Below are positions 16,401 through 51,312 of a stretch of 64,000 nucleotides of DNA, piece after piece. This DNA is from Schmidtea polychroa. Its lineage: Eukaryota. The notes under the pieces are model-generated. The model did no database searches. It was not told the DNA's origin and saw nothing but the letters and a program-made list of their open reading frames with translations. Position 1 is the stretch's first letter, and each line of letters opens with the position of its first letter. The stretch is taken from contig CM097885.1 in the NCBI GenBank assembly GCA_044892525.1, forward strand, positions 247,504,001 through 247,568,000. Reading direction: 5' to 3'. Position numbers and translations under genes: made by a program.

Positions 16401-17292
16401 ATTTTGATAAATCGATGACATTTGAGAAATGGAGGTAATAATTTAAAATTAAGTAAATTAGTGTAATATTTAAAAATAAGTAATAGATTTAAAATTTTGG
16501 TGATATGTTTAGAAGTATCGATAGGTATTGAGACTTTGAGGTAATAATTTAAAATTTAGTAAATTTATTTAAATTAGTGTAATATTTTAAAAATAAGTAT
16601 TAGATTTAAAATTTAGTTAGATATTTAAAAGAATCGATATGTATTGAATTATGGTAAATTAAGGAAATATTTTAAAGAAAAGTAAGAGGAATATTAGTGA
16701 GCACAATAAGGGCTGTAAGAGTAAAATATGTATGTCTGATTTTAAAATTTTATTAAAAAATTTTGATAATTATTGGGAACGTGTAATTTGTGAGGCGTTG
16801 TTGATAAAATCATTCAATCCGAAAATTATTGTGCAAAATGCGGTGAATACTTGTGTTTTAAATGTTTTTAAATAATTTTTTGTATATTGTATGTATTGAT
16901 TGTTGTTTGTTAAATTAAATAATTAATAAAAAAAATTTTAAATTATTAAATTAAATTATAAATGCTATAATTTTAAAAATAATATGTTTGTGAGGTGTTT
17001 TCAGCTGAGAACTAAATATTTCAATGATTTATTAAGATTTATTTTAAATGATAAATAATTGACGATTAAAATAACTTTTAAAATAATTATTAAATTGAAT
17101 TTTTTAAATTGAAATTTTTAAATTTTTAATTTGTAAAATTAAACAATCTCTCTATTAGTAAATCATTTTAAATAAATATATTTTAAATATCGAAATTTTA
17201 ATAAATAGTTTTGAAAATATTTTATTCAACGCTGAAAATTTGTTTGGAAAATGTGCAACATTTCATTAAATAAATACTTGGAATTATGACGT

Positions 17293-17538
17293 TGTGAGGA
17301 AGATTTAATTATTAGCACAATATAATATTATAATAATAAATTTACATCTGAATTATTACTATTAAGAAATTAACATATACATATATTAAAGTATTATATT
17401 CGTATTATATTATGGCGTACATAATTATTATTGTTATTTATAAATGCTTAATCGTCAATTTAATGATTTGTTTAGTCAAACCGATATTGTTATAGTTTTT
17501 GAATACAATTTGAATTCGACTTCTAGTTTTATTTAACA
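17293..17538 (+). repeat. 5' LTR (246 bp)
   Basis: TGTGAGGAAG...TTTAACA; no differences from 22217-22462 found by eye. Confidence 0.97.
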
Positions 17539-22249: not shown

Positions 22250-22462
22250 TATTATAATAATAAATTTACATCTGAATTATTACTATTAAGAAATTAACAT
22301 ATACATATATTAAAGTATTATATTCGTATTATATTATGGCGTACATAATTATTATTGTTATTTATAAATGCTTAATCGTCAATTTAATGATTTGTTTAGT
22401 CAAACCGATATTGTTATAGTTTTTGAATACAATTTGAATTCGACTTCTAGTTTTATTTAACA
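22217..22462 (+). repeat. 3' LTR (246 bp)
   Basis: Matches the 5' LTR; followed by the GACGT TSD. Confidence 0.97.
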
Positions 22463-34320: not shown

Positions 34321-34625
34321 CAAAGAGAATTCAATAAAATACTATAACCTTTGATTAATTCATTGTTGAGATATGATTTTTTGTTGAAAAATACTTGCTT
34401 TGTGATGACCTACAACATATCAAAAGTTAATGTTTTCATAAAATACTTTTTAATCACCAAAGCTATTTAAAAAGTTGAAACACAAACCATTTGTATCGAA
34501 TTTTTCGTCCTTTCAGCGACATAATTTCATCATGGGACATGTGTGAACATTAAGCAAGATTTTTTAAATTTGAATTTTAAATATCTTTTCAATTTATATG
34601 ACAATACAGAATTTGATTTCATTAT

Positions 34626-36141
34626 AGTAGGTAGATGTGAGCCCCATGAATCAGTATGAGTTATCGCGCATATATACCCCCCCCCCCTTGCTGATAAGTT
34701 ATTGCGCGTTTGATCGATGAGTTATAGCGCATATATTGATTTTTAAGTGCAAAGTGCAAAATGTGCAAAATGTGCAAAATGTGCAAAATGTGTAAAATTT
34801 ATTCAGGTGTGCTTTTCTTACATTAAAGATTTCACCCAGACATTTTCCACGAAAAAAGATTTGTTATTTGTCGACACAGATTAATTTATATGAAATCAAC
34901 AAAAAGATTTCTTTTCAATATATATGTCACGTTTTTAAGGAATAATTTTTGGAACATTGGGAACCAAGTATATTTAGTCGAGACATCCTTAACAAAAAAG
35001 TTGCGTCTTGATTCAACTAAGAAGATTCTTTAATAAAGATCTCGAAAAATTTCTTGGTTCTCCTAGGAATTCAGAAAGTGTAATCAATCAATATTTTTGG
35101 GCTATCTTGAGAACGAGACATATTTAGTCGAGACATCCTTAACAAAAAAGTTCAACTAAGAAGATTCCGAAATAAAATCCTCGAAAAGTTTCTTGGTTCT
35201 CCCAGGAATTAAGAAAAGGTAAAATCAATCGATAATTCTCAAAAATTCGGCTATGTCCGAATGTATTATGAATTATCACGGATTTTGATTGATGAGTTAT
35301 TGCGCGTTTGATCGATGAGCTATCGCGCATATATACCCCCACCCCCCTACTGATGAGTTATTGCGCGTTTGATCGATGAGCTATCGCGCATATATACCCC
35401 CACCCCCCTACTGATGAGTTATTGCGCGTTTGATCGATGAGTTATCGCGCATATATTGATTTTTAAGTGCAAAGTGCAGAAAGTGCAAAATGTGCAAAAT
35501 GTGCAAAATTTAGTCAGATGTGCTTTTCTTACATTAAAGATTTCACCCAGACATTGTTCACGAAAAAGATTTGTTATTTGTCGACACAGATTATTTTATA
35601 TGAAAATCAACGAAAAGATTTCTTTTCGATATAAATTTCACGTTTTTAAGGAATAATTTTTGGAACATTGGGAACCAAGTATATTTAGTCGAGACATCCT
35701 TAACAAAAAAGTTGCGTCTTGATTCAACTAAGGAGATTCCGAAATAAAATCCTCGAAAAGTTTCTTGGTTCTCCCAGGAATTAAGAAAAAGTAAAACCAA
35801 TCGATAATTCTCAAAAATTCGGCTATGTCCGACGGACTTGAAATATTTTCAACCATTCTATTTATGACAGTGCATCGTAAAATTTACATATTTTGATTCG
35901 ACTTTCAGCTTTCTATAGTAGTTTTGAATGGAGATTTCAAATCTTTGTTCAAATGTATACTGTTATTGTGTCAACTATGAATATTTGTTTAAATAAACTC
36001 ATTTGATTAATATATAGAGCCAATATAAATAGAGATATTAATACCAATGTTTTTGTTTTATATGTAATTAAAATCAGAGATGTCGAATCTTTGTTTTAAA
36101 AATTATTTTTCGCGCGCAATTTAAAAAATATTTACTATTTC
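34626..36141 (+). repeat. left TIR (1516 bp) with internal duplications
   Basis: Reverse complement of 49704-51211 apart from a few indels and substitutions. Confidence 0.95.
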
Positions 36142-36180
36142 TAATTAAATTTTCAAAACAATGAAACATTTATTAAAAAA

Positions 36181-36537
36181 CTATTTGAAATATTTATACA
36201 ATTCGTTGAGTAGAATGTTTACTGTTTGTTTTCTTTTGTAAGTAATACATTCTTGACATTGATATTGACAACATGAATCTTTTAGTAATTGAGTTTGCTT
36301 TTCATATCCATACATCATAAATTTATGGTGAAAAATAATGCGCTCTATGTTAATCCCAGTTGCCTGAAATATTTTGGCTGGTGCAATTTCCGGAGCATAA
36401 TTTATAATTTCATCTTTGATTTCCGGATAAATCTCAAACACTTTATTAATTAGAATTTCTATTTGATAATCTAAACATAATTTTAAAAATTTAAGAATAA
36501 AATATATTTATTTACCGATTTCAGAAACTTGTGACAT
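36181..36537 (-). CDS. Polinton accessory protein, ~103 aa, CCxxxCxxC motif; predicted two exons (36537-36516, 36470-36181)
   Basis: Track ORF starts at GTG; removing a 45-nt G/GTAAAT...TTTAG intron joins MSQVSEI in frame to DYQIEILINKVFEIYPE. Confidence 0.6.
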
Positions 36538-36573
36538 TGTAATAAATGAAACAAATGTTAAAGTGTACAATAT

Positions 36574-37023
36574 TTATAGTTTTTGTGAACCAATCAAATC
36601 ATTTACATCATTTATAATTTTGTTGACAATCCAATTATAATTTAGAGTTTTTAAACCAAGTACAACTATTTTTCCACTAGAAAACAAGTTTACACACAAG
36701 GGGTTATAAGATATGAGACGCAAACCCGGGAATATTTCTGGTTCATATACACATTTTGTTTTCTTTGACAAATATTGCAAATTAATTAGTTGTTTGATAT
36801 CAATAGTAATTGTACAAGATTGAAGATGAACATCTTTAATATTATAATGTATGCTTTCAATAGGTTTTTTGCAACCCATTATTCGACATTTCCCTGTCTT
36901 GAAGAATATAATTGTATAATTATCAGTTTTATCTATTATTTGCTGAGGTTTACCATAAGGAAAATTCATATTTTGTATAACTTTTAATGAAACCCGTCCA
37001 CGGTAATTAATATTTACTAACAT
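36574..37023 (-). CDS. TATA-binding protein (TBP)-like protein, 149 aa
   Basis: Two TBP repeats: LVNINY...IIFFKTGKCRIMGCK and LQSCTI...YEPEIFPGL...VNLFSSGKIVVLGLK, compared with TBP YEPELFPGL...LIFVSGKVVLTGAK. Confidence 0.88.
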   Translation of the reverse strand: MLVNINYRGRVSLKVIQNMNFPYGKPQQIIDKTDNYTIIFFKTGKCRIMGCKKPIESIHYNIKDVHLQSCTITIDIKQLINLQYLSKKTKCVYEPEIFPGLRLISYNPLCVNLFSSGKIVVLGLKTLNYNWIVNKIINDVNDLIGSQKL

Positions 37024-37180
37024 TATTGAAAATAATGGATAACTCTAGGTAATTATATTGATTATTTTAAATTTTAAATATTATTATGACAACCAAATTA
37101 TGATATCATAACAACACGATTTTTAAACAGAAACATTTATTTAATAAAAATAACATAAGATATTAACATACATAATTTCT

Positions 37181-37573
37181 TTATAATTTTCCACTTACAA
37201 TCTTCCATATAGGTAATATTGCTGTACTTGGCGCTATTTTATAACCTTGAATGCAAATTTTCATATTCCATTTAGCATTAGGTTTAAATGGGATTTGATT
37301 CTCGTCTTCATCATAAAATTTCGTTGATGGACCGCCTATGAATGAACCATTTTCATTAACTATAAGTTGCTTGTTGATTCGTCCAAATATTGTAGTAATC
37401 GCTTCTTGATCTTCTTGAGAGAATTCTTCAATCCAGTAATTGTAACTAGTTTTCACTAGTTCAACAGGAATCAACAAATTGTAATTGATCGGATTGACTA
37501 GTAAATGTATTTGATGCTCATGAAAAATATAAGTTGCTTTAAATAACGGTTGCTCATTCTTCATATTCAACAT
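37181..37573 (-). CDS. hypothetical protein, possible OB-fold ssDNA-binding protein (130 aa)
   Basis: ATG-started intact ORF; TKFYDEDEN...MKICIQGY...PIWKIV resembles the C-terminal strands of NCLDV/T7 gp2.5-type SSBs (recalled pattern, not searched). Confidence 0.5.
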   Translation of the reverse strand: MLNMKNEQPLFKATYIFHEHQIHLLVNPINYNLLIPVELVKTSYNYWIEEFSQEDQEAITTIFGRINKQLIVNENGSFIGGPSTKFYDEDENQIPFKPNAKWNMKICIQGYKIAPSTAILPIWKIVSGKL

Positions 37574-37728
37574 TTGAAATAATGATAAACTTTAAGTTCT
37601 ATACACACACTGTCTCACATACATCTCTCATTTGTTCATTTTATCAACAAATCAAATACTTGTTACATTAACCAATCAAAATATGCATTAATCTTGCATA
37701 TTAATTTCAAGATACATTCATTTTTACA

Positions 37729-38163
37729 ATGAATGAATACATAATCGCCATTGTCAATGGTTTAATTTATAAAAGTGATGATCAAACAATAAATTGTTTA
37801 TTAAAAATAATAAAAGAAGTAGAGCTTCGATGTACCATTGATTTCTCTTCTATTTTATCATCGGAAGGTAATCAGGAAAAAACATTCAAGGATGTCTTTG
37901 AATCGTTGTTTGAGGATGGTATATGTTGGTCTAAAGTCATCGTTAGCTTAATGTATGTCAGAAACATTCTTATTTTATGCCCAAATGAACATCCAAAATA
38001 TATGAACTGGTCAGTGCAAGAAATTACAAAAATATACCCATGGATCAAAGAAAATGGTGACTGGAAATATATAAAAAAATTAGAGTTACATTTTTGGTTA
38101 AGAACTATGTTTAAACGTTTCATTATATTTTTTGTCAATTTAATAAAAATTTATAAACTTTGA
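37729..38163 (+). CDS. Bcl-2-like protein (144 aa)
   Basis: BH1-like LFEDGICWSKVIVSL (Bcl-2 family LFRDGVNWGRIVAFF), BH2-like WIKENGDW (WIQENGGW), hydrophobic C-terminal tail. Confidence 0.85.
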   Translation: MNEYIIAIVNGLIYKSDDQTINCLLKIIKEVELRCTIDFSSILSSEGNQEKTFKDVFESLFEDGICWSKVIVSLMYVRNILILCPNEHPKYMNWSVQEITKIYPWIKENGDWKYIKKLELHFWLRTMFKRFIIFFVNLIKIYKL

Positions 38164-38233
38164 TAGTTAATTTAACTTGCATCAAATTCATATTTATTAC
38201 TTACATATTAATAATAACATTCTAGATCAACCT

Positions 38234-38263
38234 AGAATGTTCTAGAACATTCTAGAACATTCT
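38234..38263. promoter_or_regulatory. heat-shock element with six alternating nGAAn units
   Basis: aGAAt gTTCt aGAAc aTTCt aGAAc aTTCt; further GAAnnTTC at 38341-38348 and TTCnnGAAnnTTC at ~38366-38378; TATATAA at 38354-38360. Confidence 0.75.
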
Positions 38264-38550
38264 AGTTGATTGGTAACAATAAATATTTAGATACAATAAT
38301 TAGTTATTATTTAACTATGAACAAAATCTATGAATAAAAAGAATATTCTTAGTTATATAAAAAAATTCTAGAAGATTCTATTTGGTTGTTAACAATAGTT
38401 GCTTAGATAATTAACTATTGTTTTAATATTACATTTGAATTTCAATTAATCAATTAATTTTTATCTAACAAGTAAGATTTTATTTTGCTCTTGTTAAATA
38501 TTTATTTTCTTTTCTTTCAGATATTATTCATTCAAAATAAAAGAAGAAGA

Positions 38551-38788
38551 ATGCCAAATATTAAAAAACAAACGGTAAACTTTATTTATTTAATATATAT
38601 ATTAAGTTTTTCGTTTAGAAAATATGTTGTGATATCGATCAAGGAAATGATATGGAAGATTTCTATGATACATGTAAGTTATAAATTTTTATAATAAATT
38701 AAATTTTAATTAAATACTATTTTTTTTTAATAAATTTTATAATAAGTTAAATGTTTTAGCCGCTTTTCATAATAATACATTTAAATTA
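38551..38788 (+). CDS. putative spliced micro-ORF (~35 aa, MPNIKKQTKICCDIDQGNDMEDFYDTSAFHIIHLN)
   Basis: Consecutive GT-AG introns at 38472-38520 (UTR), 38575-38618 and 38674-38759; coding status unproven. Confidence 0.35.
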
Positions 38789-39132
38789 ATTTTTTAATGA
38801 TGGTAATACGTTCCAGTATTAATTTTATATAATACAATTAAATTAATTTTTTAATGATGGTAATACGTTCCAGTATTAATTTTATAAGTTTCGATTCTAT
38901 GTTTAATTACAATAAGAAAAGCTTTCAAAATAAATTTCAATTTGTAAAATCGAAAACCCTTCAATTTAAATCAAAAATAACCGGTAATATTTTTCCAATT
39001 GCAAACTGGTTAACTAATCAAATAAAATTCAAATTCTATAAGTTTGAATTCTGCTTTAAATATTTTTGACTAAATTATATTACTTTTAACTTCAAGTAGC
39101 AAGCATATAATAAATTATTATTTATATGGTAA

Positions 39133-39316
39133 ATTGCTGACCGGACAGACAAAATAAATCCGACTAAGGGTACTTAGGGGTAGTCACCTGGGGTTGAAAC
39201 ATAGTCTATGACCTGTCCCGAGTCAAATGAGGGTCACGTGTAAAATTTCAGCATCCTAGGTCCGACGGTGGGGAATTCTATAGAAAACAAACAAACTTTC
39301 ATCTTTATATATTAGA
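39133..39316 (-). mobile_element. small Helitron-like (Lep1-type) insertion inside the Polinton
   Basis: Minus strand begins a/TCTAATATATAAAGATGAAAGTTTGTTTG and ends GTCTGTCCGGTCAGCAAT, resembling recalled ends of such elements; GC-richer than its flanks. Confidence 0.35.
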
Positions 39317-40101
39317 TTTAATTAAGGATTATTATTTTATATATATATATATATTTTTAATAAATTAAAATTGAAAAAATAGATACAAATCTTTGTGAAT
39401 TTGAGATTTTCTTTGAGATTTTCTCCATTGGGTGTCTTTTTAAAATATAATTAATATTATATTTAAACAAATTTAAACATAAATAATGTTTGTTTAAAAA
39501 AAAAATATCAAATGGTAAAAATGACAAAAACGGTAAAAATGTCAATTGTATCGTCTTATTTATAATATTAAACTAAACAACATTAATATTTTTTTAATAA
39601 ATTTTATAATAATTTTAATTTATTTTTAATATTATTAAAATAGTATAAACATTACAAGTTATTGTTTTTGCTATCATCAATACTCTATAGGAGACGCAAA
39701 GAATTCTTTATGTACCAATAAGAATACAATATTATTGATCTAGCTTTATTGCATACTTTCCATGGTACACTGGAAATCACATCACTTGCATAATAGCTTG
39801 GTCACAGAAATCTGTATTCACGTAAACATAAGGTATGAAATCATAATCACCTCTGTTGACTAAAAAAATAGTCAATACATAGAAACTGTTTACAAATGCA
39901 TCCGTTTACCTTTAGCATTTTTAACTTATAAAGTAATGGTTTTTTGTCGGATGTCTTACACTTGAATAAAATAAACTACACATTGTTTGTGATTATAAAA
40001 CTTTTTTCTCAAAATATATGGAACACAAAAGTGAAACCCGAATTATTTTAATAAAATAAAATTCATTTAATAAATATTTAAATCATTATTTATTTTAAGG
40101 T

Positions 40102-43100
40102 GTGTTATACCCAAATTATTGTCAAAACAGTAGTCACAATAAAAGCTGTCATAAAATCATGCAAACATATTATGGCAAAACATATTATCAACAAAATTAC
40201 TTTTTATGCCCATATTGCGAAACTTTAAGTTCCGATCCCTACATGTCCTTTTATAACACGCATAAGACACATTTAAATCAATTTGTGATGCGTAAAGATA
40301 AGCTTTTCAAAAGAAAGGTTTCCACTCACTTAATTAAAAATAAAAAAGCAAGATTGGAGAAAATAGAAAATACAATATCGAACTCAGAAATAATTGTAAT
40401 CATAGATTCGGAGGAAGAAGATTCGAGGCATGAAGAAACTGGAAGTTCAAGGCGCAACGAAGCAGGAAGTTTAAGGCGTGAAGAAGTTGGAAGTTCAAGG
40501 CCTGAAGATAAGCTTATCAAAAGAAAGGTTTCCACTCACTTAATTAAAAATAAAAAAGCAAGATTGGAGAAAATAGAAAATGCAAACTCAGAAATAATTG
40601 AAATCAAGGATTCGGAGGAAGAAGATTCGAGGCATGAAGAAGCTGAAAGTTCAAGGCGTGAAGACGCTGGAAGTTCAAGGCGCGAAGAAGCTGGAAGTTC
40701 AGGGCGCGAAGAAGCTGGAAGTTCAAGGCGCGAAGACGTTGGAAGATCTGAAGAAGAAGAAATTGATATAATAAATGGATCGTTTGAAATAATAGAAGAA
40801 CTAGATTTCAATGATCAAAACGAAAATATATCGAATGTTGACAGTGATAGTACTGACTATGCAGATCACTACTCACTAGTTGATGACTTTCAAACAGGAG
40901 CAGGAATATCAGATGAACCGGAAATTGAATGTGATTTATACAGAACACATAGAATTATCACACTGGACATATCTTGTTATAATATACAAAAAATAGTTAT
41001 TCCACCAACGTTGCTGATAAAATTAAACGCTTGTATAAATGAAATGAAGAGCGTTAAGATACAGTTCGAGATCAATGCAGAATTCGTCAAAGACGGTGAG
41101 CTGAAGACTGCAAGAATTTCAAACAGAGCCACAAAATTAACAGATGACTTTTTAGATGAAGGAATCGAAAGTTTGAATGAGAAAATTGCTATTAGATCGG
41201 AGTTGGGTAGCAGTTGGCGTCTTAACAGGATACTGGAGATTAATTTTAAAATAACAAAGTTTGCCGAAATTAGTCGATTGTCTGGACATCGACATATAAG
41301 AACCCGGCATCATTAAAGAATAAAATTATAAACATCCAAAATCAAGACAATCTGTGTTTTATCTACAGCGTTTTGTCTATATTGAAATACGAAGACATTC
41401 ATGAAAACCGTAACAGACCGTCACAATATTATCGGTACATGAATGAAGTAAATTACGATTCGGAAAACCCTCCGACAACATTGAATGACATAAAGAAATT
41501 TGAAGATCAGAATCCAGGATTGGCGATCAATGTTCTCTCATACGAGTCGGATGATACATATTTAAATAATGATGATGATGTTGTTATGAAACATCCGAAT
41601 ATAGACATAATTAGGAGGACAAAGGTTAAAGATGTTACACCAATATATTTATTATTACTAAGTGAAAGTAATAATTACCATTACGTTGGAATACCTAATA
41701 TCAACAGGTTAATGAACTGTCATGTATCCAATAATTGTACAGTTCGAATTCAATGTATATGGTGTGTAAATTGTCTAAATGGATTTCGGAGACAATTGAC
41801 ATATGAAAGACATCTGGCTTTATGTAAGAAAAATCAGCTTGGGACAACTTTGTACGTTATGCCAACAGAAAAAGAGCTCAGATTCAAAGATTGGTCGAAG
41901 AAAGTGACTCCACCTTTCGTAATCTATGCTGATTTCGAATCTATTTTACCAGACGATCAGCAATACCATCAGAAACACTTACCGATTTCAGCTGGACTTT
42001 TGCTGATAAACAATTTTAGCGGAGCTTCCTCATATTTTCAATTTATTGGGTTAAATTGTATATTTGATTTTTTAAAGAAAGTAGAGGAAATAGCAGAAAA
42101 TAAAGTAAATCATTATTACCAGAGAAATGGTAAACAACCTTTAATTCTCAGTCCAACGGAACAATCCTCTTTTAATATGCAATCATTTTGTTATATATGT
42201 AAGGAACACTGTGATCATTTGGTTCGAGATCATGATCATTTCAGCGGGAAATATTTAGGTGCGGCATGTGGAAAATGTAATCTTTCAAGAAGAGTACGTC
42301 GAGTGCTTCCAGTAGTATTTCATAACCTGAGAGGTTATGATATGCATCATATTTTAAAATATGGCATAAATAAATTCCCTCACTGGAATTTGAGTTGTAT
42401 TCCGACAACATCCGAAAAATTTCTTACGCTTATTGCGCATTGTAAGCAAATAAAGATCAAATTCATTGATTCATATCAGTTTGTAAATGAATCTTTGGAT
42501 AATGCAGTAAAAACAATAAACAGTTTACCAATTACAAATGCAGCATTTACGGGAACAATACAGGATTCAAAAGGTATTTTTCCATACAATTTTGCCACAA
42601 GCCTGGAAGTTCTACGAGAAACCAGAGAATTGCCACCAATTTGGGAAGGAGTGTCACAAGCCGCATATGATAAAGCAGTGAACATATGGTCTGAAACCGG
42701 ATGTGAAACCCTTTTAGACTATATGATGATATATCTAAAGTTGGATGTATATCTTTTAGCAGATTACTTTCAACAATTCAGAACTAAATCACTAGCCCAT
42801 AATGGATTGGAACCTTTAAATTTTTTCGGTATTCCGGGAATGACATGGGCATCGGCATTAATGTCATTGGATAGACCTATTGAATTGTTGCAAGATAATG
42901 AAATGTATAATTATTATGAAGCTGGCATTCGAGGAGGTATGACTTTCGTTAATAAACATCAAGTCAGAAGAGATGAAAATACAGAGTTATTATATATCGA
43001 TATAAATAACTTGTATGGATGGGCACTTAGTCAGAGTTTGCCATATGGAAAGTTTGAATGGATCCATACTGATTTGGACACTATTCTAGAAGAGTGTAAA

Positions 43101-44243
43101 TCATCAAACATAGAGAATTTACCATATGGATATACGTTGGAGGTTGATATGAATATTCCAGATGAAATTCATGATTTATTAGACGATTTACCTGTTGCAC
43201 CAGAGAAGATGTGTCCAGAAGGAACAAAAGTGGAAAAGCTTCTGTTAACACATTACCCGAAGAAAAACTATGTAATTCATTGGCGACTATTGAAAATGTA
43301 TATGTTTTTAGGAGTTGAAGTAACAAATATACATCGGGCAATCAAGTTTAACCAATCAACTATTTTCAAGGAATATGTGGAAGCCAACACCAAATTGAGG
43401 GCTCAATCAACATCTGAACTGGAGAAGGGATATTATAAACTATTAAACAACAGTTTATATGGGAAAACAGTGGAAAATTTAAAGAAGAGGATGAATTTAA
43501 GGTTGTGCAATTCACAAAGAAAAATGGTAACATATTCATCAAAACCAACCTTCAAGAGAAGTATAAAGATTGCAGATGATTTAATAGCTGCAATTATGAA
43601 CCCTGATGTTGTATGTTTGGATAGACCTTCGTATATTGGACAAACAGTTTTAGATCTCTCCAAACTAAGAATGTATGAGCTGCAGTATATAGAACTACAA
43701 AAGTACCGTGAACAGTTCAATTGTGAGATTAATATAGCAGCAGGGGATACGGATTCGTTCTTCTTGGAAATTAAGAATCTTAAATTGCAAACATTATTAG
43801 AAGCTATGATCCAAGATAATCTATTGGATGCATCTAATTATAATTCGTCTCATCCGCTGTATAACAGAAGATTAGATTCTGTTATAGGAAAGTTTAAGGA
43901 TGAAAGTAAGGGAGTCCTATATGATGAATGGATATTTCTTCGGCCAAAGCTTTATAGTTTGTTGGGTGGTCCAAAGAAAACTATTAAAGCCAAAGGTATT
44001 AGATTGAATGAAACTGAGATAGATCATCAATCATACATCGACTGTTTTAATGGAATGGAAATACCTAAAGTCATACAAACGAGGCTTGGGTCCAAAAATC
44101 ATCAACTTTACACATTTAAATCAACAAAGTTGGCTCTGTCAAATAAGGATGATAAAAGGGTATGGGTGGGTCGGAACAAAAGTTTTGCATATGGACACTA
44201 TAGTATAAATATTGTTGATAATGATGATAATATATTTGCATGA
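40102..44243 (+). CDS. polB: protein-primed DNA polymerase B, split by a one-base frameshift near 41303 (~1380 aa if joined)
   Basis: YIDINNLYG, KLLNNSLYGK and GDTDS motifs; endonuclease VII-like CYIC...RDHDH...ACGKCN insert; INIQNQDNLCF lies upstream of the 41373 ORF in the same frame. Confidence 0.95.
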
Positions 44244-44388
44244 TTATATGTGAAATCAACTGTCAAATTTCCTTAAACAGACATTCTATTTTTTATGTAT
44301 ATAAAGAGTTGTTATTGTTATTTAATAAAATATTGTACAAAAACTGTGTTATTTTAGTTATTTTTGAAAATAAAGAAATGAACACCAA

Positions 44389-44773
44389 CTAATATTTATT
44401 AAACTCAAAACATAACCAAACAATACAATGTTGTCCACATGTAACTGTTAGCGGTTCTTGATAACGAATTCTATTGTACACGATAGGTTTTGATAATTTC
44501 GACAACTTCGACACTAACAGAGGCGGATAATAGTAACCCATCGGATCAAACACTTTAATCTTTTCAGGTTTAACAAATACTGCTAGCCAATGTTCGCCAT
44601 CGAGACTTGATGATTGGGTATTGACTATTAAAGCATTGTTACTTTCAAGAAAAGGGATTTTATCCAGCGGATAAACTCCTAAAAACCTGTCTCCAAACAG
44701 ATTTGTTGCAATACAATTAAGCTGAACAGAACTAATCAAGTAAATCGTTTATTAGAAAGTAAACTTACTCCAT
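44389..44773 (-). CDS. adenain-like cysteine protease; predicted 5-nt first exon plus 37-nt intron (115 aa)
   Basis: GEHW, VFDPMG and YQ...TCGQHC catalytic motifs; ATG GA/GTAAGT...TTAG/T TCT GTT gives MDSVQL. Confidence 0.9.
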
Positions 44774-44803
44774 ACTTCAACTTACTCCATACTTCATCTT
44801 TGT

Positions 44804-46033
44804 TTAAACTAGAATTGACCGATTTGCTGAAATCTGTATTTCGCTTTCAAAAACTCCATAAATAATTACATATACAGGAGATGTTAAAGCCTTGTTGAAT
44901 TTAATATCAAGTCTCAGATTTCCATTTTGTGGCAATTGACTTTGATTCCAATCAAAGTCTGAAGCCAAAATGAATGTAAAGAAAGGATATTTGGTCTTAA
45001 AATCTACAATGTCGATTCCGCAATTTAAATTCTTATCTAAATAACCCATATTTCGAACTATAGATTGCATATAGGTCGCAGCATAGTTATCGTTGTCGAA
45101 ATCTTGAGTATATGTCTCACGATAATCGGAATTTTTTGATAAAGTTAAAGAAGTTATACTGAAATGTGCGAATTTTGAGCTAGTTTCTGTATATGAACCA
45201 TTATATTGTGCTTCTGATTGGAAGGTTACAAGAATAAAATTTGGCAAACGTTTATCGCCAAATATTTGTTCTTTATAAAATGAGGATGAATCTTTACTTA
45301 TTGCAAAGGCAACAATTTCTTTGGTTTTGATAGGATAAATCGCATGTTGTGAATTAAGACCAATCTGATGGCCTGCCAACACTGATGACTCAACTCGTAC
45401 ACGGCTAACCATTAATTTTGCATCAACCAACTGATATTTTGGTGATGCTCCAGCTACAGATGTATCCAAACAAAATTTTGAGTCTGATCTCTTCATACGA
45501 ATATGTACATTGACTCCTGGTAGTAAATATTTAGGCTGATCCATAAAATCTAGTTGTAATGATGAACACATTGAAAACAGTCTTGATTTCGCAATCCATG
45601 TTTTCCTAAAATCTTTACTTCCATAACCCATCGGCGCAAGACAAATACTTTTTGTATCTCCGTTATAGTTTAAAATTGTTTCAATTAAAGCTTTGTGTGC
45701 ATATGTGTTGTTGCCACTTTCGATTTTGATATTATTAAAACCCAGAATAACATCTTTAAATAGAGTATGAAACATGTAGTTGGTTGGAATTACATCAACA
45801 CCATCTGCCAGATCTTTATTGTCTTTATCTACAACCTTCAGTTGAATGGATAATAGAGTGTCATTCAAATCTAAATATTCAGTCTGTGAACCGTTAACAA
45901 AAAATTCTACATCATTCCTTGAATCAGTAATTGAATTCATAGGAAATACATCTTCAAATATTCCATTTTCAATTACTACTTGTGGAGACGGACGATCAAA
46001 AATACACAATTCAGTTTTACCGGAGATCATCAT
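44804..46033 (-). CDS. double jelly-roll major capsid protein (409 aa from ATG 46033)
   Basis: N-terminal KTELCIFDRPSPQ, YLDLNDTLLSIQLKV and C-terminal GNLRLDIKF..L...V.VIIYG.FE match Polinton MCP. Confidence 0.92.
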   Translation of the reverse strand: MMISGKTELCIFDRPSPQVVIENGIFEDVFPMNSITDSRNDVEFFVNGSQTEYLDLNDTLLSIQLKVVDKDNKDLADGVDVIPTNYMFHTLFKDVILGFNNIKIESGNNTYAHKALIETILNYNGDTKSICLAPMGYGSKDFRKTWIAKSRLFSMCSSLQLDFMDQPKYLLPGVNVHIRMKRSDSKFCLDTSVAGASPKYQLVDAKLMVSRVRVESSVLAGHQIGLNSQHAIYPIKTKEIVAFAISKDSSSFYKEQIFGDKRLPNFILVTFQSEAQYNGSYTETSSKFAHFSITSLTLSKNSDYRETYTQDFDNDNYAATYMQSIVRNMGYLDKNLNCGIDIVDFKTKYPFFTFILASDFDWNQSQLPQNGNLRLDIKFNKALTSPVYVIIYGVFESEIQISANRSILV

Positions 46034-46406
46034 TTTCGAATATTGTTCCACGACCTTTCCATCTTTTGTTTATACGAGATTTTCGTCGCTTACTCAAAAT
46101 TTGTTGTGGTGTTGATGTTGGAGGTTTTTTAGTTTCATTTGGTTTAGAAATCTTTGCTGCACTTGGCATCAATTTCCCAATTTCATTCATTGCATGTCTT
46201 TTCAATGTTGGTAGTATTTTTTGATCTTTCATTACCACATCCTTTGCTGTTCTCATGCCAAATGAACCAATCTTTTTAAGTATTGGAAGTGCGAACCTTC
46301 CAATTGTTTGCAACCATCCGGATCCATATTGCTTACCCATAAAATATGGTAATTCTCCACCAGTTTGACTATTACTATATAACGACACAATATCAGGATA
46401 AGACAT
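46017..46406 (-). CDS. basic virion core / membrane-active protein with Gly-Gly-type cleavage sites
   Basis: QTGG and QYGSG followed by amphipathic WLQTIGRFALPILKKIG; Lys/Arg-rich tail; conserved position upstream of MCP. Confidence 0.7.
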   Translation of the reverse strand: MSYPDIVSLYSNSQTGGELPYFMGKQYGSGWLQTIGRFALPILKKIGSFGMRTAKDVVMKDQKILPTLKRHAMNEIGKLMPSAAKISKPNETKKPPTSTPQQILSKRRKSRINKRWKGRGTIFENDDLR

Positions 46407-47409
46407 TCACCTTTCGAAAATGTAAAGTCAAATGGGTTTTTGAATCTTTTGAAAAGTTTATCAATTTTCCAGAATCATCACGTATATTAATTTCTATATT
46501 GTTTATACATGATGTTGCAACAGATAAATACATAGGATTTTCAATCGTTATCTGTACCACTTCATCTTGTTCATGCTTTTCAACCCATACTGCTTTCATT
46601 AGAGGAACACTTACATCACCAACAATTACAGATTCAACAATATTACTATAAATGAACATTTGCTGATGAAGTTTAATTATTTTTGGTTTCGATGTTCCTT
46701 CGTTAACTTTTAAGTTTTGTATATACGTTTCTTTTGATAATCCTAATGTCTTTACCAAATTAGAGTCAAATTTCATTTGGCCAACATTCGGATTCATTTG
46801 AAATTTAAAAAATTTGTCTAATTCAACAACAGCGAAAATATCTGCACAATGTTTTGTTAAATAAACTTTTAATTGATCAAGATCTGTAATATACAAATCA
46901 TCTTGAAATGTATAGCTATGCTCAACAGCTTTGTTATACAAGAGTTGAAATTTGAATATAGCATCAGTTTTTGGAAGAGTATCAATATCAAATTTCACCG
47001 TTTCATCAAAAGTGTTACGCAATAGAGTAAATCCTAGGCGTTTTGCATCAGTTAAGGTTTCAAATAAAAATTGAAATGGTCGCTTCAAACATTGAAAGTA
47101 TAAATATCTATCCTCAACATATATTATCGCATTTGTATTTGCTTGATTGATCATTTCATAGCTATCTTGAATTATCTGCACTTTGACAATTTCTGATACT
47201 GATTCCATCTTGGTATATTCAATCTTGGATTTACTGTAAAACGGAAAGAGATTGTATACAAATGTAAAACCCAACAAGGACACTTCCCAACTACCATTTA
47301 AATAGATTGGATTTTGAAGTTCGACAATAAATTTACTGGCATTGTTATTTGGATGAATTAAAGGAGAGCTATTGGTGGGTAAAATCATGTAAAAATTAGT
47401 TTTATTCAT
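46393..47409 (-). CDS. penton (single jelly-roll minor capsid protein), 338 aa from ATG 47409
   Basis: FYMILPTNSS..HPNN.ASKF.VEL..PI.L.GSWEVSL at the N-terminus; YSNIVE..IVGD..PL and I.I.IRD..G..I.F at the C-terminus. Confidence 0.9.
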   Translation of the reverse strand: MNKTNFYMILPTNSSPLIHPNNNASKFIVELQNPIYLNGSWEVSLLGFTFVYNLFPFYSKSKIEYTKMESVSEIVKVQIIQDSYEMINQANTNAIIYVEDRYLYFQCLKRPFQFLFETLTDAKRLGFTLLRNTFDETVKFDIDTLPKTDAIFKFQLLYNKAVEHSYTFQDDLYITDLDQLKVYLTKHCADIFAVVELDKFFKFQMNPNVGQMKFDSNLVKTLGLSKETYIQNLKVNEGTSKPKIIKLHQQMFIYSNIVESVIVGDVSVPLMKAVWVEKHEQDEVVQITIENPMYLSVATSCINNIEINIRDDSGKLINFSKDSKTHLTLHFRKVNVLS

Positions 47410-48428
47410 TTCAACTGAGATTCCAGTATCCAAGTAGGGTTTTGATAACCATGCCATTTGACATAATATTGTTTATGCTTCCCTTTTCCTCTGGTCTTTA
47501 GAATTTCTTGTATTCTAAAAGTTGTAGGACTTGGAATAACTTGTAATTCTTGTTCATAAAATTTACCTATAATTTCATTGTTATCATAATCCTTAATGAC
47601 ATACATTATTGGACTCTGTTTAGTGTTAATCTTCGAAATTTGAAAAACTTCGTCGCTCCAATTACTATCAAAGTTTTTAATGAATGGAGAAGCACTAATT
47701 TTTGATATTCTTACATAATCACTGATTTTATATTTTGCTTTCTTGGGTTTTGGAACTTGTCGAGATAACCATAATTTGACTTGATTATCATTTGAAACAT
47801 CAACTGGTCTTAATCCATTTAAACCACGGTGCGAGGAATGATTATATGAATGAATCAGATTTTGTAAAACATGTATCCATGTCTTATTGCCTTGATGTAC
47901 AAAATACTTTTTCAATTTATCTCTCAATGTACGATTAAATCGTTCGACATAGGCTGCCTTATATTGAGAATGAACAGTGTAGTGATTTACATGATTTTCT
48001 TTTAGAATTTGTTTAACTTTACTGTTGTAAAATTCCTTACCCAAATCAGTTTGCAAATTATCGGGATGTCCATCAGCAAATAAACTCTTTATTGCTTGAG
48101 CAATTTCACTAGCAGATTTAGTTTTAACAGGTATAGCTCTCGCAAATCGGCTAAATATGTCAATACATGTTAAAATATATTTGTAACCTTTGTTGATACT
48201 GGAATATGGAATCATTTCCAACAAATCCGCTTGCCATAAATCATCAATACCAAATGTTTTATATGCTCTTGTTGGAAATCTTTTTAACATCGGTTTGTTG
48301 AGACTGTATGCAAGTTGGCTTGATAACCAATTTCTTGTCTCTTTCTTTGATTTCTTCATTGCTTTCTGTAGTCTGTCGATTCCGCCGAAAGATGCTGGGT
48401 CTCTTGGATTTGTCCAAATTTTCTCCAT
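47406..48428 (-). CDS. int: retroviral-like DDE integrase with C-terminal chromodomain (340 aa from ATG 48428)
   Basis: WQADL, IDIFSRFA, LQTDLGKEF, VERFNRTL; ILKTRG...YYVKWHGY..TWI chromodomain. Confidence 0.95.
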   Translation of the reverse strand: MEKIWTNPRDPASFGGIDRLQKAMKKSKKETRNWLSSQLAYSLNKPMLKRFPTRAYKTFGIDDLWQADLLEMIPYSSINKGYKYILTCIDIFSRFARAIPVKTKSASEIAQAIKSLFADGHPDNLQTDLGKEFYNSKVKQILKENHVNHYTVHSQYKAAYVERFNRTLRDKLKKYFVHQGNKTWIHVLQNLIHSYNHSSHRGLNGLRPVDVSNDNQVKLWLSRQVPKPKKAKYKISDYVRISKISASPFIKNFDSNWSDEVFQISKINTKQSPIMYVIKDYDNNEIIGKFYEQELQVIPSPTTFRIQEILKTRGKGKHKQYYVKWHGYQNPTWILESQLK

Positions 48429-48489
48429 TGCAACAATTTGAATTAAAATCAAGTTTGAAATTCGGTAATGAAGGACTACCACCCATTGT

Positions 48490-49092
48490 TTATGAACTTC
48501 GACTTCCTAATAAACCTGCTCCACCTAATAAAGATAATGCAAGAGGAATTAATGCAGCTATAAATCCTCCTTGTTGTTTATACATAATCTTTCTCATTTG
48601 TTTTTTGTTTTTGCTATTTACAAGTGATAGAAGCGATTTCTTGTGTTTTTCCAAAATATGTTTTCTTGCACTGCTTATATTTATCTTCCCATGTACAACT
48701 TTCATTATAATATCAAGTAAATCATCTATCACAAATGTAGGGAATGTTTGTAAAATTATCATTCTTGATTGTTTAGGAGCCTTCAACAAAGAATTAAAAT
48801 ATGGTAAGCTTCTTGGAATTTTGATTTTTCTAGATGCTATAAAATCTTTAGGTTTTTGTTTTGATAATTGAAACTCTTTTGGTTCAGTGTAACTGGTTTT
48901 CAGTGGAATTTTATTTGCAATTTTATTTGTAATTTTCCTCTTCTTACGCTTTGCAATCAAATTCTTCAATTTCTTTGAAGGTTTGATAATTACTTTTTGA
49001 AAAGACATTATTAATCTTTTCAAGTGATCAACTTTGTTTATATACTGTTGCACCGTTTTTGTTAAATATATCTGTTCGAACTCGTAATTCAT
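48490..49092 (-). CDS. basic Polinton structural protein ending QQGG-FIAALIPLALSLLGG (start may be ATG 49008)
   Basis: Lys-rich body with a C-terminal QxGG site and hydrophobic helix, as seen in Polinton core proteins. Confidence 0.7.
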   Translation of the reverse strand: MNYEFEQIYLTKTVQQYINKVDHLKRLIMSFQKVIIKPSKKLKNLIAKRKKRKITNKIANKIPLKTSYTEPKEFQLSKQKPKDFIASRKIKIPRSLPYFNSLLKAPKQSRMIILQTFPTFVIDDLLDIIMKVVHGKINISSARKHILEKHKKSLLSLVNSKNKKQMRKIMYKQQGGFIAALIPLALSLLGGAGLLGSRSS

Positions 49093-49651
49093 CCGAACAT
49101 TTTTGGGTAAAGTCTAGAAATAAATATCCATGGGGAATTTTAGTTGCATCTTGAAATGCTTCTAGTAGAAACTTCCTATTGTTTGGGTATGCTTGTCTTG
49201 CTAGAAAATCAATGACTGTTGCATCTCTAGGGTTTTTAAAAATTGTTAGATAATGTACATTTAAATTACGAGTTCTATGATTTCCTCCTTGATGGAAAAG
49301 ATTTTGGGTTATAAAAATAACTGTAACTCCAACATGTCTAGAAATCTTTGTAAACAAATTATTAAATTCCTTTTCTTTGTTGGCTTCTTGATATAAATCA
49401 TCAATGATGATGACATCTCTCTTTTGTAAACGTTTTGTCCAATCTTTATCAAACCCTTTTATAATTTTCATTTGTACTTTACAGAATTCTGAATGCGTCA
49501 AACCATTTTCAGTTTCTGAACCTCGATGCCAATATATTTTGTTGAATTTTTCAACAAACAAATTAGACTGAAGCAATTTACATACAAAAAGCGTTTTACC
49601 GCTTCCACTAGGACCGACAATTTGATAAACAGCTTCATTTTGTAATTCCAT
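49028..49651 (-). CDS. FtsK/A32-family genome-packaging ATPase
   Basis: Walker A GPSGSGKT, Walker B IIIDD, SRH..VTVIFITQNLF; TATATAAA on the minus strand at 49684-49677. Confidence 0.95.
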   Translation of the reverse strand: MELQNEAVYQIVGPSGSGKTLFVCKLLQSNLFVEKFNKIYWHRGSETENGLTHSEFCKVQMKIIKGFDKDWTKRLQKRDVIIIDDLYQEANKEKEFNNLFTKISRHVGVTVIFITQNLFHQGGNHRTRNLNVHYLTIFKNPRDATVIDFLARQAYPNNRKFLLEAFQDATKIPHGYLFLDFTQKCSDELRVRTDIFNKNGATVYKQS

Positions 49652-49703
49652 TTAAAAAGATGTACTACAAATATTGTTTATATAATGAGTCGAAAAACAT
49701 GTT

Positions 49704-51211
49704 GAAATAGTTAATATTTTTTAAATTGCGCGCGAAAAATAATTTTTAAAACAAAGATTCGACATCTCTGATTTTAATTACATATAAAACAAAAACATTG
49801 GTATTAATATCTCTATTTATATTGGCTCTATATATTAATCAAATGAGTTTATTTAAACAAATATTCATAGTTGACACAATAACAGTATACATTTGAACAA
49901 AGATTTGAAATCTCCATTCAAAACTACTATAGAAAGCTGAAAGTCGAATCAAAATATGTAAATTTTACGATGCACTGTCATAAATAGAATGGTTGAAAAT
50001 ATTTCAAGTCCGTCGGACATAGCCGAATTTTTGAGAATTATCGATTGGTTTTACTTTTTCTTAATTCCTGGGAGAACCAAGAAACTTTTCGAGGATTTTA
50101 TTTCGGAATCTCCTTAGTTGAATCAAGACGCAACTTTTTTGTTAAGGATGTCTCGACTAAATATACTTGGTTCCCAATGTTCCAAAAATTATTCCTTAAA
50201 AACGTGAAATTTATATCGAAAAGAAATCTTTTCGTTGATTTTCATATAAAATAATCTGTGTCGACAAATAACAAATCTTTTTCGTGAACAATGTCTGGGT
50301 GAAATCTTTAATGTAAGAAAAGCACATCTGACTAAATTTTGCACATTTTGCACATTTTGCACTTTCTGCACTTTGCACTTAAAAATCAATATATGCGCGA
50401 TAACTCATCGATCAAACGCGCAATAACTCATCAGTAGGGGGGTGGGGGTATATATGCGCGATAGCTCATCGATCAAACGCGCAATAACTCATCAGTAGGG
50501 GGGTGGGGGTATATATGCGCGATAGCTCATCGATCAAACGCGCAATAACTCATCAATCAAAATCCGTGATAATTCATAATACATTCGGACATAGCCGAAT
50601 TTTTGAGAATTATCGATTGATTTTACCTTTTCTTAATTCCTGGGAGAACCAAGAAACTTTTCGAGGATTTTATTTCGGAATCTTCTTAGTTGAATCAAGA
50701 CGCAACTTTTTTGTTAAGGATGTCTCGACTAAATATGTCTCGTTCTCAAGATAGCCCAAAAATATTGATTGATTACACTTTCTGAATTCCTAGGAGAACC
50801 AAGAAATTTTTCGAGATCTTTATTAAAGAATCTTCTTAGTTGAATCAAGACGCAACTTTTTTGTTAAGGATGTCTCGACTAAATATACTTGGTTCCCAAT
50901 GTTCCAAAAATTATTCCTTAAAAACGTGACATATATATTGAAAAGAAATCTTTTTGTTGATTTCATATAAATTAATCTGTGTCGACAAATAACAAATCTT
51001 TTTTCGTGGAAAATGTCTGGGTGAAATCTTTAATGTAAGAAAAGCACACCTGAATAAATTTTACACATTTTTGCACATTTTGCACTTTGCACTTAAAAAT
51101 CAATATATGCGCGATAACTCATCGATCAAACGCGCAATAACTTATCAGCAAGGGGGGGGTATATATGCGCGATAACTCATACTGATTCATGGGGCTCACA
51201 TCTACCTAACT
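49704..51211 (-). repeat. right TIR (1508 bp)
   Basis: Inverted copy of 34626-36141. Confidence 0.95.
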
Positions 51212-51312
51212 CATTATATTGATAGTTATCTTCTCTTTCCTACGGTGGAGAAGAGAGAATTTTCCAACTGTGGAGACACGAAACTAATTTGCATAAAGTT
51301 TTTATTGAAAAC

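What the first reader, a model, noticed from the sequence alone, without database searches (positions are those of the whole stretch)
37729..38163. Viral-type Bcl-2 with a non-canonical BH1 motif
Seen: compact intronless BH1/BH2 protein with a C-terminal hydrophobic anchor; NWGR is replaced by CWSK and the second Gly of BH2 by Asp. Established: adenovirus E1B-19K and many large DNA viruses use Bcl-2 mimics to block apoptosis, and the BH1 Gly-Arg shapes BH3 binding. Inference: it is an anti-apoptotic factor for a productive viral cycle, or has an altered groove with another role such as autophagy or innate-signalling inhibition.
Basis: partly seen in the sequence, partly recalled or inferred. 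Interest (0 to 1): 0.7.

Follow-up and report, generated by a model that had tools for sequence, protein, structure and literature searches.

The report
Bcl-2 gene carried by a Maverick
The ORF is a real, intact Bcl-2-family gene, carried as cargo by a recently inserted virus-like Maverick/Polinton (adintovirus-type) element in an AT-rich animal genome; such cell-death regulators have already been reported in these elements, so it is a new member of a known kind.

Summary
ORF 37729-38163 (+, 144 aa) matches Pfam Bcl-2 just above the curated cut-off, and a profile of it and its few relatives hits Bcl-xL in the PDB at E = 7e-12. The C-terminal "anchor" is weak and basic.

The gene lies inside a 16.6-kb Maverick/Polinton (adintovirus-like) insertion, 34626-51211. 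The element has about 1.5-kb near-perfect terminal inverted repeats and a 6-bp target duplication. It encodes a protein-primed PolB, an rve integrase, an A32-type ATPase and conserved virion-module ORFs.

Related elements in metagenome assemblies carry the same accessory set: Bcl-2, a TBP-like gene and a small ORF. Other relatives lack Bcl-2. One related Bcl-2 gene keeps a short intron at the family-typical BH2 position, which points to capture from a host gene.

The BH1 Gly-to-Ser change is shared with the two closest relatives, which evolve under purifying selection (dN/dS about 0.12). It is therefore a lineage trait, not decay.

A pro-survival role during element replication is the best inference but is untested. 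Structure prediction failed (pLDDT about 53-55). Adintovirus Bcl2 and IAP homologs were reported in 2021, so novelty is modest.

The parts
37729..38163 (+). Bcl-2 family gene (144 aa, continuous ORF): BH4-like N-terminal helix, degenerate BH3 region, BH1 = CWSK, BH2 = ENGDW, basic and weakly hydrophobic tail
34626..51211 (.). Whole Maverick/Polinton (adintovirus-like) insertion, 16,586 bp, termini 5'-AG...CT-3'
34620..34625 (.). Left copy of the 6-bp target-site duplication (CATTAT)
51212..51217 (.). Right copy of the 6-bp target-site duplication (CATTAT)
34626..36141 (.). Left terminal inverted repeat (about 1.5 kb, with internal tandem repeats)
   Evidence: blocks of 991 nt and 368 nt are 100% complementary to the right arm, and a 91-nt block is 99%
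49704..51211 (.). Right terminal inverted repeat
36574..37023 (-). TBP-like gene (149 aa, two TBP repeats), part of the conserved accessory set
   Evidence: Pfam TBP E = 1.9e-14; 51% identical to the TBP gene of L002
37181..37573 (-). 130-aa ORF of unknown function, transcribed divergently from the Bcl-2 gene; homologs sit next to TBP in L004 and L007
   Evidence: E = 4e-14 to the L004 110-aa ORF; no Pfam family
40102..44243 (+). [quoted passage not shown] Homology to relatives spans 40891-44210 and is split over two reading frames, so the gene is interrupted once, by a frameshift, an assembly error or a short intron.
   Evidence: Pfam DNA_pol_B_2 E = 6e-34; 50-64% identity to metagenomic pPolBs; frame count
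44389..44739 (-). Possible adenain-like protease; weak match to the N-terminal part of the profile only
   Evidence: Pfam Peptidase_C5 E = 1.2e-4, 22.2 bits against a cut-off of 21.3; no detectable similarity to the ORFs at this position in relatives
44804..46051 (-). Conserved 409-415 aa ORF, candidate major capsid protein (inferred from position and conservation only)
   Evidence: 57-65% identity over 100% of the L002 and L004 homologs; no Pfam or PDB sequence hit
46017..46406 (-). Conserved small ORF (129 aa), virion-module position
46393..47457 (-). 354-aa ORF of a family of about 330 aa that is present as 2-3 tandem paralogs in relatives; candidate minor capsid or other virion protein (inferred)
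47406..48482 (-). Retrovirus-type integrase (rve core, weak chromodomain)
   Evidence: Pfam rve E = 1.1e-11; 72% identical to L002
48490..49092 (-). Conserved ORF, homolog of the 103-109-aa ORFs between integrase and ATPase in relatives
49028..49651 (-). A32/FtsK-type genome-packaging ATPase
   Evidence: Pfam Pox_A32 E = 1.4e-8; 77% identical to L002
38233..38264 (.). Array of six contiguous alternating GAA/TTC 5-mers (heat-shock-element-like palindrome), about 70 nt after the Bcl-2 stop; a 3-unit copy lies at 38366-38378
38278..38283 (+). AATAAA, a possible poly(A) signal for the Bcl-2 transcript
   Evidence: read directly

Best explanation
Shown: the ORF encodes a cellular-type, multi-BH-domain Bcl-2-family protein. 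It is an accessory (cargo) gene of a recently integrated Maverick/Polinton element of the adintovirus kind, and it sits in a small accessory set with a TBP-like gene and a 130-aa ORF that related elements share.

Inferred: when the element is expressed, the protein acts as a pro-survival Bcl-2. Through its basic, weakly hydrophobic tail it would associate with mitochondrial or ER membranes, and it would hold the host's death-promoting Bcl-2 relatives or BH3 proteins in check. The cell would then survive while the element's polymerase, packaging ATPase and capsid genes act.

Also inferred: the BH1 changes (Gly to Ser, Arg to Lys) are a conserved trait of its sub-lineage. They probably retune the groove to the host's ligands rather than abolish it. 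The gene was most likely captured long ago from an animal host gene.
For: Family: Pfam Bcl-2 is above its cut-off and is the only family found. The family profile hits Bcl-xL and Bcl-2 at E = 7e-12 to 3e-9. The best PDB matches are pro-survival members (Bcl-xL 24.7 bits, Bcl-2 22.4, A1 19.3), slightly ahead of Bax at 18.9. An N-terminal BH4-like helix aligns with that of Bcl-xL-type sequences. The BH3 region lacks the Gly-Asp pair, as is usual for non-killer members.

Carrier: TIRs, TSD, pPolB, integrase and ATPase.

Conservation: near-complete related elements L002 and L007 carry a Bcl-2 gene next to a TBP gene, and every core gene is shared at 33-77% identity.

Selection: the two closest relatives differ at dS about 1.0 with dN/dS = 0.12, and both keep Ser in BH1.

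Host origin: the L002/L007 gene keeps a 41-nt GT..AG intron directly after the BH2 Trp codon. This is the same place where the cellular-type genes L014 and L015 have GT. A second exon encodes a tail anchor.

Precedent: adintovirus homologs of Bcl2 and IAP are reported (PMC8502044), and IAP is reported in leafhopper adintoviruses.
Against: There is no functional or structural test. Both AlphaFold2 runs were of low confidence (pLDDT 55 and 53), and the Foldseek matches are not meaningful (TM about 0.22).

From established knowledge of Bcl-2 and Bcl-xL mutagenesis, replacing the BH1 Gly even with Ala abolishes Bax binding and protection. Ser at that site could therefore mean a changed or lost groove.

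The tail is much less hydrophobic than in relatives.

The polymerase gene of this copy is split over two frames, so this copy may not be autonomous and its cargo may be idle.

Bcl-2 is absent from several related elements, including four substantial contigs (L003, L004, L005, L018), so it is dispensable for the lineage.

The genomic context of the two closest relatives (short contigs L001 and L008) is unknown. They could be cellular genes.
Confidence: 0.6

Rival explanations
1. The Bcl-2 fold is kept but repurposed. With Ser and Lys in BH1 and no canonical tail anchor, the protein no longer binds BH3 helices. It would act on another host pathway, such as autophagy, innate signalling or calcium/ER functions, as some viral Bcl-2-fold proteins do.
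For: BH1 is CWSK instead of the usual motif. The Ser is conserved in the sub-lineage under purifying selection, so it is functional rather than decayed. The tail is basic and weakly hydrophobic.
Against: The rest of the BH1/BH2 region is very close to the pro-survival consensus (alignments). Lys at the Arg position also occurs in a canonical-looking relative, L016. The sister gene in L002/L007 keeps Gly-Arg. No data point to any specific alternative pathway.
Confidence: 0.2
2. The gene is idle cargo of a dead copy. The element has stopped replicating and the Bcl-2 ORF is intact only because the insertion is young.
For: The polymerase gene is split over two frames. The protease match is weak and partial. 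The C-terminal tail differs from that of relatives. Degraded remnants of related elements lie nearby.
Against: The TIRs are essentially identical, and the other shared genes with detectable counterparts in relatives each match in a single frame at 86-100% coverage. The single interruption could be an assembly error in AT-rich sequence or an intron. Even so, the gene family is under selection in relatives.
Confidence: 0.12
3. It is a death-promoting member (Bax/Bak/Bok-like) used to kill the cell, for example for release of particles.
For: Multi-BH proteins with a tail can be effectors. Bax is also matched in PDB at 18.9 bits.
Against: The BH3 region lacks the conserved Gly-Asp. The best matches are Bcl-xL and Bcl-2. 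The known precedent in these elements is for anti-apoptotic homologs.
Confidence: 0.05
4. It is an ordinary host Bcl-2 gene or retrogene that merely lies near transposons.
For: The closest relatives, P0001 and P0123, sit on short contigs with no element genes in view.
Against: The ORF lies between the two TIRs of one insertion bounded by a target duplication. The same gene type sits in the same accessory set in independent related elements.
Confidence: 0.03

Closest known systems
Bcl2 homologs of adintoviruses / animal Polintons (Starrett et al. 2021, PMC8502044)
   Same: An accessory anti-apoptosis-type gene in an element with pPolB, rve integrase, packaging ATPase and a capsid module. The paper states that homologs of Bcl2 and IAP were observed.
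   Different: I could not compare sequences: the supplementary figures are not held, and viral comparators may not be fetched. This lineage was not found in IMG/VR, and its Bcl-2 has only three detectable close relatives in the protein collections searched. Pairing with a TBP-like gene is not reported for animal adintoviruses in that paper, where TBP is listed for elements of non-animal eukaryotes.
Cellular pro-survival Bcl-2 proteins (Bcl-xL, Bcl-2)
   Same: Same family by profile, with BH4-like, BH1 and BH2 regions aligned over about 90 residues. In a sister gene the intron position after the BH2 Trp is kept.
   Different: Only 144 aa, with no long loop after the first helix. BH1 has Gly to Ser and Arg to Lys, the BH3 region is degenerate, and the tail is weak. 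It is encoded by a mobile virus-like element.
Sequence-recognisable viral Bcl-2 homologs of herpesviruses, asfarvirus and some poxviruses (established knowledge, not compared here)
   Same: Captured host-type Bcl-2 genes, compact and intronless, presumed to delay death of the infected cell.
   Different: The carriers there are large exogenous DNA viruses. No such viral protein appears among the 60 best PDB matches listed in either search, which are all cellular Bcl-xL, Bcl-2, A1 or Bax.
Adenovirus E1B-19K
   Same: The proposed role, blocking death during replication. Adenoviruses also share capsid and protease ancestry with Polintons.
   Different: No sequence likeness was detected. Pfam at E <= 1 returned only PF00452. 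The likeness is functional analogy only.
BCL-2 domain in giant Gypsy-like retrotransposons of planarians (Arkhipova and Yushenova 2019, PMC6431247)
   Same: Another mobile element that carries a Bcl-2-type domain.
   Different: There it is a domain inside a huge retroelement polyprotein. Here it is a free-standing gene in a DNA element.

Membership tests
Bcl-2 family (Pfam PF00452) | Significant match to the family profile above the curated threshold | tested here: met
   32.7 bits against a cut-off of 31.4, E = 1.1e-7, full-length profile match. Relatives score 40-45 bits. The family profile against PDB Bcl-xL gives E = 7e-12.
Bcl-2 family (Pfam PF00452) | Canonical BH1 motif (Asn-Trp-Gly-Arg type) | tested here: not met
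   The Trp is kept, but the motif reads CWSK. Gly to Ser is shared with P0001 and P0123. The sister gene P0124 has SWGR. This is a variant motif, not an absent one.
Bcl-2 family (Pfam PF00452) | BH2 motif (Trp ... Glu-Asn-Gly-Gly-Trp type) | tested here: met
   W-I-K-E-N-G-D-W. The same Asp variant occurs in the cellular-type L014. W, I, N, G and W are invariant in the 11-sequence alignment.
Bcl-2 family (Pfam PF00452) | Helical bundle of about 8 helices around a central hydrophobic helix, with a surface groove | tested here: inconclusive
   Both AlphaFold2 models are all-helical, with 8-10 helices in the expected order. However, pLDDT is 55 and 53 and pTM is 0.38-0.39. Foldseek TM is about 0.22.
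Bcl-2 family (Pfam PF00452) | C-terminal tail anchor | tested here: inconclusive
   The best 19-residue hydropathy is 1.12, with 8 Lys/Arg in the last 32 residues. Relatives score 1.74-1.83. By hand calculation, the second exon of the L002 gene (translated) scores about 1.7.
Pro-survival subgroup of the Bcl-2 family | Binds BH3 helices of death-promoting relatives and protects cells | not testable with these tools
   Only indirect evidence: the best matches are Bcl-xL and Bcl-2, a BH4-like helix is present, and the BH3 is degenerate.
Maverick / Polinton (adintovirus-like) elements | [quoted passage not shown] | tested here: met
   Pfam DNA_pol_B_2 E = 6e-34. There are 527 homologs at E <= 1e-10, including animal genome entries. 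In this copy the gene is split over two frames.
Maverick / Polinton (adintovirus-like) elements | Retrovirus-like (rve) integrase | tested here: met
   Pfam rve E = 1.1e-11.
Maverick / Polinton (adintovirus-like) elements | Long terminal inverted repeats, 6-bp target-site duplication, 5'-AG...CT-3' ends | tested here: met
   Arms of about 1.5 kb, 99-100% complementary. CATTAT lies on both sides, and the termini are AG and CT. The comparison with the published hallmark of Polintons is from established knowledge.
Maverick / Polinton (adintovirus-like) elements | A32/FtsK-type packaging ATPase and adenain-like protease | tested here: met
   The ATPase is clear (Pox_A32 E = 1.4e-8). The protease is only marginal (22.2 against 21.3 bits, N-terminal third of the profile).
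Maverick / Polinton (adintovirus-like) elements | Double and single jelly-roll capsid proteins | tested here: inconclusive
   Conserved ORFs lie at the expected place.
Sequence-divergent viral Bcl-2 mimics (adenovirus E1B-19K, poxvirus Bcl-2-like families) | Match to the corresponding Pfam families | tested here: not met
   The Pfam scan at E <= 1 returned only PF00452.

The most novel reading that the evidence does not exclude
Bcl-2, the TBP-like factor and the small ORF form a conserved host-takeover cassette of a so far undescribed clade of invertebrate Mavericks. In this copy the cassette is wired to stress through the heat-shock-element-like array next to the Bcl-2 gene. The Ser/Lys BH1 variant gives a groove with a ligand range unlike that of any characterised Bcl-2 protein.
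Probability: 0.12. Interest if true: 0.6.

Novelty: new member of a known kind. Interest (0 to 1): 0.35.

Why it matters
It gives a clean, bounded example of a Maverick/adintovirus-type element carrying a host-derived cell-death regulator together with its own TBP-like factor. This supports the view that these elements behave as viruses that manage the state of their host cell, not as plain transposons. In a sister element the family-typical BH2 intron is retained, which is direct sequence evidence for capture from a host gene and for nuclear, spliced expression. The conserved Gly-to-Ser change in BH1 is a natural variant at a position known to be critical in mammalian Bcl-2 proteins, so a structure of this protein would be informative about groove plasticity.

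Tried and rejected
- **Structure prediction.** Neither a single sequence nor a 4-sequence alignment gave a usable model (pLDDT 55 and 53). The Foldseek search of PDB listed Bcl-xL first, but at TM about 0.22, so I do not count it as fold evidence.
- **Word-based protein search.** The single protein found nothing. The exhaustive phmmer search found one true relative and one spurious repeat protein, P0002.
- **IMG/VR.** Scans with the Bcl-2 alignment and with the capsid-candidate alignment found no relatives.
- **Capsid candidates.** PDB sequence and profile searches found nothing.
- **Host identity.** Exact look-ups of ten window ORFs found none in the collection. Rfam and tRNA scans of the window were empty. 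The host remains unidentified beyond "AT-rich animal-type genome".
- **Metagenome scan.** The eight loci returned included three (L011-L013) that are vertebrate Bcl-xL-type DNA, that is, contaminating host sequence. I entered them in one alignment before recognising this and left them out afterwards.
- **Lost tail hypothesis.** I considered that the window protein's odd tail reflects a lost relative-type anchor. The tails of P0001 and P0123 have no significant match in any frame of the region, so I make no such claim.
- **Ordinary host gene.** Rejected because of the TIR and TSD bounds.

Full report
**1. The observation**

The ORF is at 37729-38163 (+): ATG to TGA, 144 aa. The window is 26.6% GC, so a stop-free run of this length is expected only about 0.07 times over six frames.

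- Pfam returns a single family, PF00452 Bcl-2. The match has E = 1.1e-7 and 32.7 bits against the curated cut-off of 31.4, and it covers the whole profile.
- phmmer against PDB puts Bcl-xL first (E about 2e-4), then Bcl-2, A1 and Bax.
- A profile of the protein and its four relatives hits Bcl-xL at E = 7e-12.
- The gene is continuous through BH2.

The one weak item is the "hydrophobic anchor". The last 32 residues hold 8 Lys/Arg and only a 10-12 residue hydrophobic run. The best 19-residue hydropathy mean is 1.12, against 1.74-1.83 in the closest relatives.

**2. What carries it**

The window is AT-rich with sparse ORFs, as expected for a eukaryotic chromosome. The ORF lies inside one insertion:

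- Inverted repeats of about 1.5 kb lie at 34626-36141 and 49704-51211. Blocks of 991 nt and 368 nt are 100% complementary.
- The ends read 5'-AG...CT-3'.
- The 6-bp CATTAT is duplicated at 34620-34625 and 51212-51217.

Inside are the following genes:

- a protein-primed family B polymerase (Pfam DNA_pol_B_2, E = 6e-34);
- an rve integrase with a weak chromodomain;
- an A32-type ATPase;
- a marginal adenain-like match;
- several conserved ORFs at the position of the virion module.

This is the anatomy of a Maverick/Polinton of the adintovirus kind. The 6-bp duplication and the AG/CT ends match the published hallmarks, which I cite from established knowledge.

The near-identical TIRs indicate a young insertion. 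In this copy the polymerase homology is split over two reading frames, which I count as one interruption. I do not give its place. It may be a frameshift, an assembly error or a short intron. The other shared genes each match relatives in a single frame at 86-100% coverage.

**3. Relatives**

The polymerase has 527 homologs at E <= 1e-10. The nearest (50-64% identity) are all from metagenome or run assemblies, and annotated animal genomes appear at about 31% (a beetle and an abalone). I fetched several contigs.

- **L002 and L007.** These are 16.3-kb and 15.1-kb contigs from two samples, 99.86% identical to each other. They carry every core gene of the window element at 33-77% identity. They also carry a Bcl-2 gene (Pfam E = 5e-10), a TBP gene (E = 1.7e-19) and a small ORF homologous to window ORF 37181-37573.
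- **Same set in the window.** The same three genes sit together in the window at 36574-38163, although at the other end of the element.
- **Other relatives.** These come mostly from one sample whose contigs also hold piggyBac-type and retroelement genes, that is, animal-type genomic DNA. They have TBP (L004) or a RING protein (L003) but no Bcl-2.

Bcl-2 is therefore a sporadic accessory gene of this clade.

**4. The Bcl-2 sub-family is tiny**

An exhaustive phmmer search of 1.84 billion representatives found one true relative, P0001 (166 aa; 49% identical over the stretch phmmer matched, 44% by BLASTP). A profile search added P0123 (170 aa) and P0124 (125 aa, the L002/L007 gene). IMG/VR has none.

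P0001 and P0123 lie on 0.9-kb and 1.4-kb JGI contigs that show no element genes, so their context is unknown. From memory, these JGI sets may be soil metatranscriptomes. I could not verify that.

**5. Is the non-canonical BH1 decay?**

No. In the alignment the Gly-to-Ser change is shared by the window protein, P0001 and P0123, while P0124 keeps Gly-Arg. P0001 and P0123 differ at dS about 1.0 with dN/dS = 0.12, which indicates strong purifying selection with the Ser in place. Lys at the Arg position also occurs in another metagenomic relative (L016), and the BH2 Asp occurs in a cellular-type gene (L014).

**6. Origin**

In L002 and L007 the codon for the BH2 Trp is followed directly by GT. A 41-nt GT..AG interval leads in frame to a 41-aa exon with a clear tail anchor. 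The cellular-type genes L014 and L015 have GT at exactly the same place, and from established knowledge this is the conserved intron position of the family. The sister gene thus still has a host gene's structure, which argues for capture from host DNA and for nuclear spliced expression. The window gene, P0001 and P0123 are continuous there.

**7. Mechanism**

- **Shown:** family membership, the carrier, the conserved accessory set, and constraint in the nearest relatives.
- **Inferred:** a pro-survival role during expression of the element. This rests on the ranking of PDB matches, a BH4-like first helix, a BH3 region without the Gly-Asp pair, and the literature.

On the literature, Starrett et al. 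2021 state that adintovirus homologs of Bcl2 and IAP were observed. A 2026 preprint lists IAP in leafhopper adintoviruses.

Three things count against a simple reading: the Ser at a position where Ala is already disabling in mammalian proteins (established knowledge), the weak tail, and the interrupted polymerase gene of this copy. I put 0.6 on the pro-survival reading, 0.2 on a repurposed fold, 0.12 on idle cargo, and less on the remaining rivals.

**8. Structure**

Both AlphaFold2 jobs gave all-helical models with helices in the expected order but low confidence (pLDDT 55 and 53). Foldseek placed Bcl-xL first only through residue similarity (TM about 0.22). The fold test is therefore inconclusive, and the case rests on sequence profiles.

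**9. Comparison and novelty**

This is a new member of a known kind: a Bcl-2 homolog in an adintovirus-type element. The points of some interest are:

- the pairing with a TBP-like gene in an apparently animal-borne clade;
- the retained BH2 intron in the sister gene;
- the conserved BH1 Ser;
- a heat-shock-element-like array beside the gene.

**10. Slips to disclose**

- I wrote it before I knew that the gene is split.
- None was entered in a tool or used as evidence.
- Three vertebrate Bcl-xL-type metagenome loci (L011-L013) were included in one alignment before I recognised them, and I left them out afterwards.

Noticed in passing
window 38233-38264 and 38366-38378: A heat-shock-element-like array: six contiguous alternating GAA/TTC 5-mers, then a 3-unit copy next to a TATATAAAA. 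The 4-unit pattern is expected 0.03 times in the window, and all five 3-unit matches of the 64 kb fall here. It is absent from the 16 loci fetched at the time of the search. It could be a stress-responsive enhancer or simply a palindromic hairpin in the Bcl-2 3' region.
   Followed up: partly
window 36574-37023 (-); L002 12985-13431; L004 7583-8161; L007 10604-11050: The element and three relatives encode a compact TBP-like protein (Pfam TBP E = 1.9e-14 to 1.7e-19). Starrett et al. list TBP only for related viruses of non-animal eukaryotes, so a conserved TBP gene in this clade may deserve its own look.
   Followed up: partly
L002 12748-12914 (and the same in L007): The Bcl-2 gene called as 125 aa is probably two exons. 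A 41-nt GT..AG intron follows the BH2 Trp codon, and a 41-aa second exon encodes the tail anchor. Such a short intron hints at a host with very short introns.
   Followed up: yes
window 17293-22462: A Ty3/gypsy LTR retrotransposon with 246-nt LTRs that are 100% identical, a gag with zinc knuckles and a 1175-aa pol ORF. It is a young insertion nested between inverted repeats at about 16320-16647 and 26736-26957, which may mark another DNA element that also holds a GIY-YIG ORF (23875-24633).
   Followed up: no
window about 31970-33310 and 60358-60718: Degraded remnants of related Maverick genes: integrase and ATPase pieces in several frames upstream of the intact element, and a polymerase fragment downstream. 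The region has been hit by this element family more than once.
   Followed up: partly
L002 6945-9969; L004 11070-13141; window 46393-47457: One virion-module ORF of about 330 aa is present as three tandem paralogs in L002/L007, two in L004 and L005, and one in the window element.
   Followed up: partly
window 40290-40760: Tandem direct repeats (units of about 210 nt and 24 nt) encoding acidic and Ser/Arg-rich peptide repeats lie in the open reading frame upstream of the part of the polymerase gene that is homologous to relatives.
   Followed up: no
L011, L012, L013: Three metagenome contigs returned by the Bcl-2 pattern scan are vertebrate Bcl-xL-type genomic DNA, that is, host contamination of those metagenomes. 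They are not relatives of interest.
   Followed up: no
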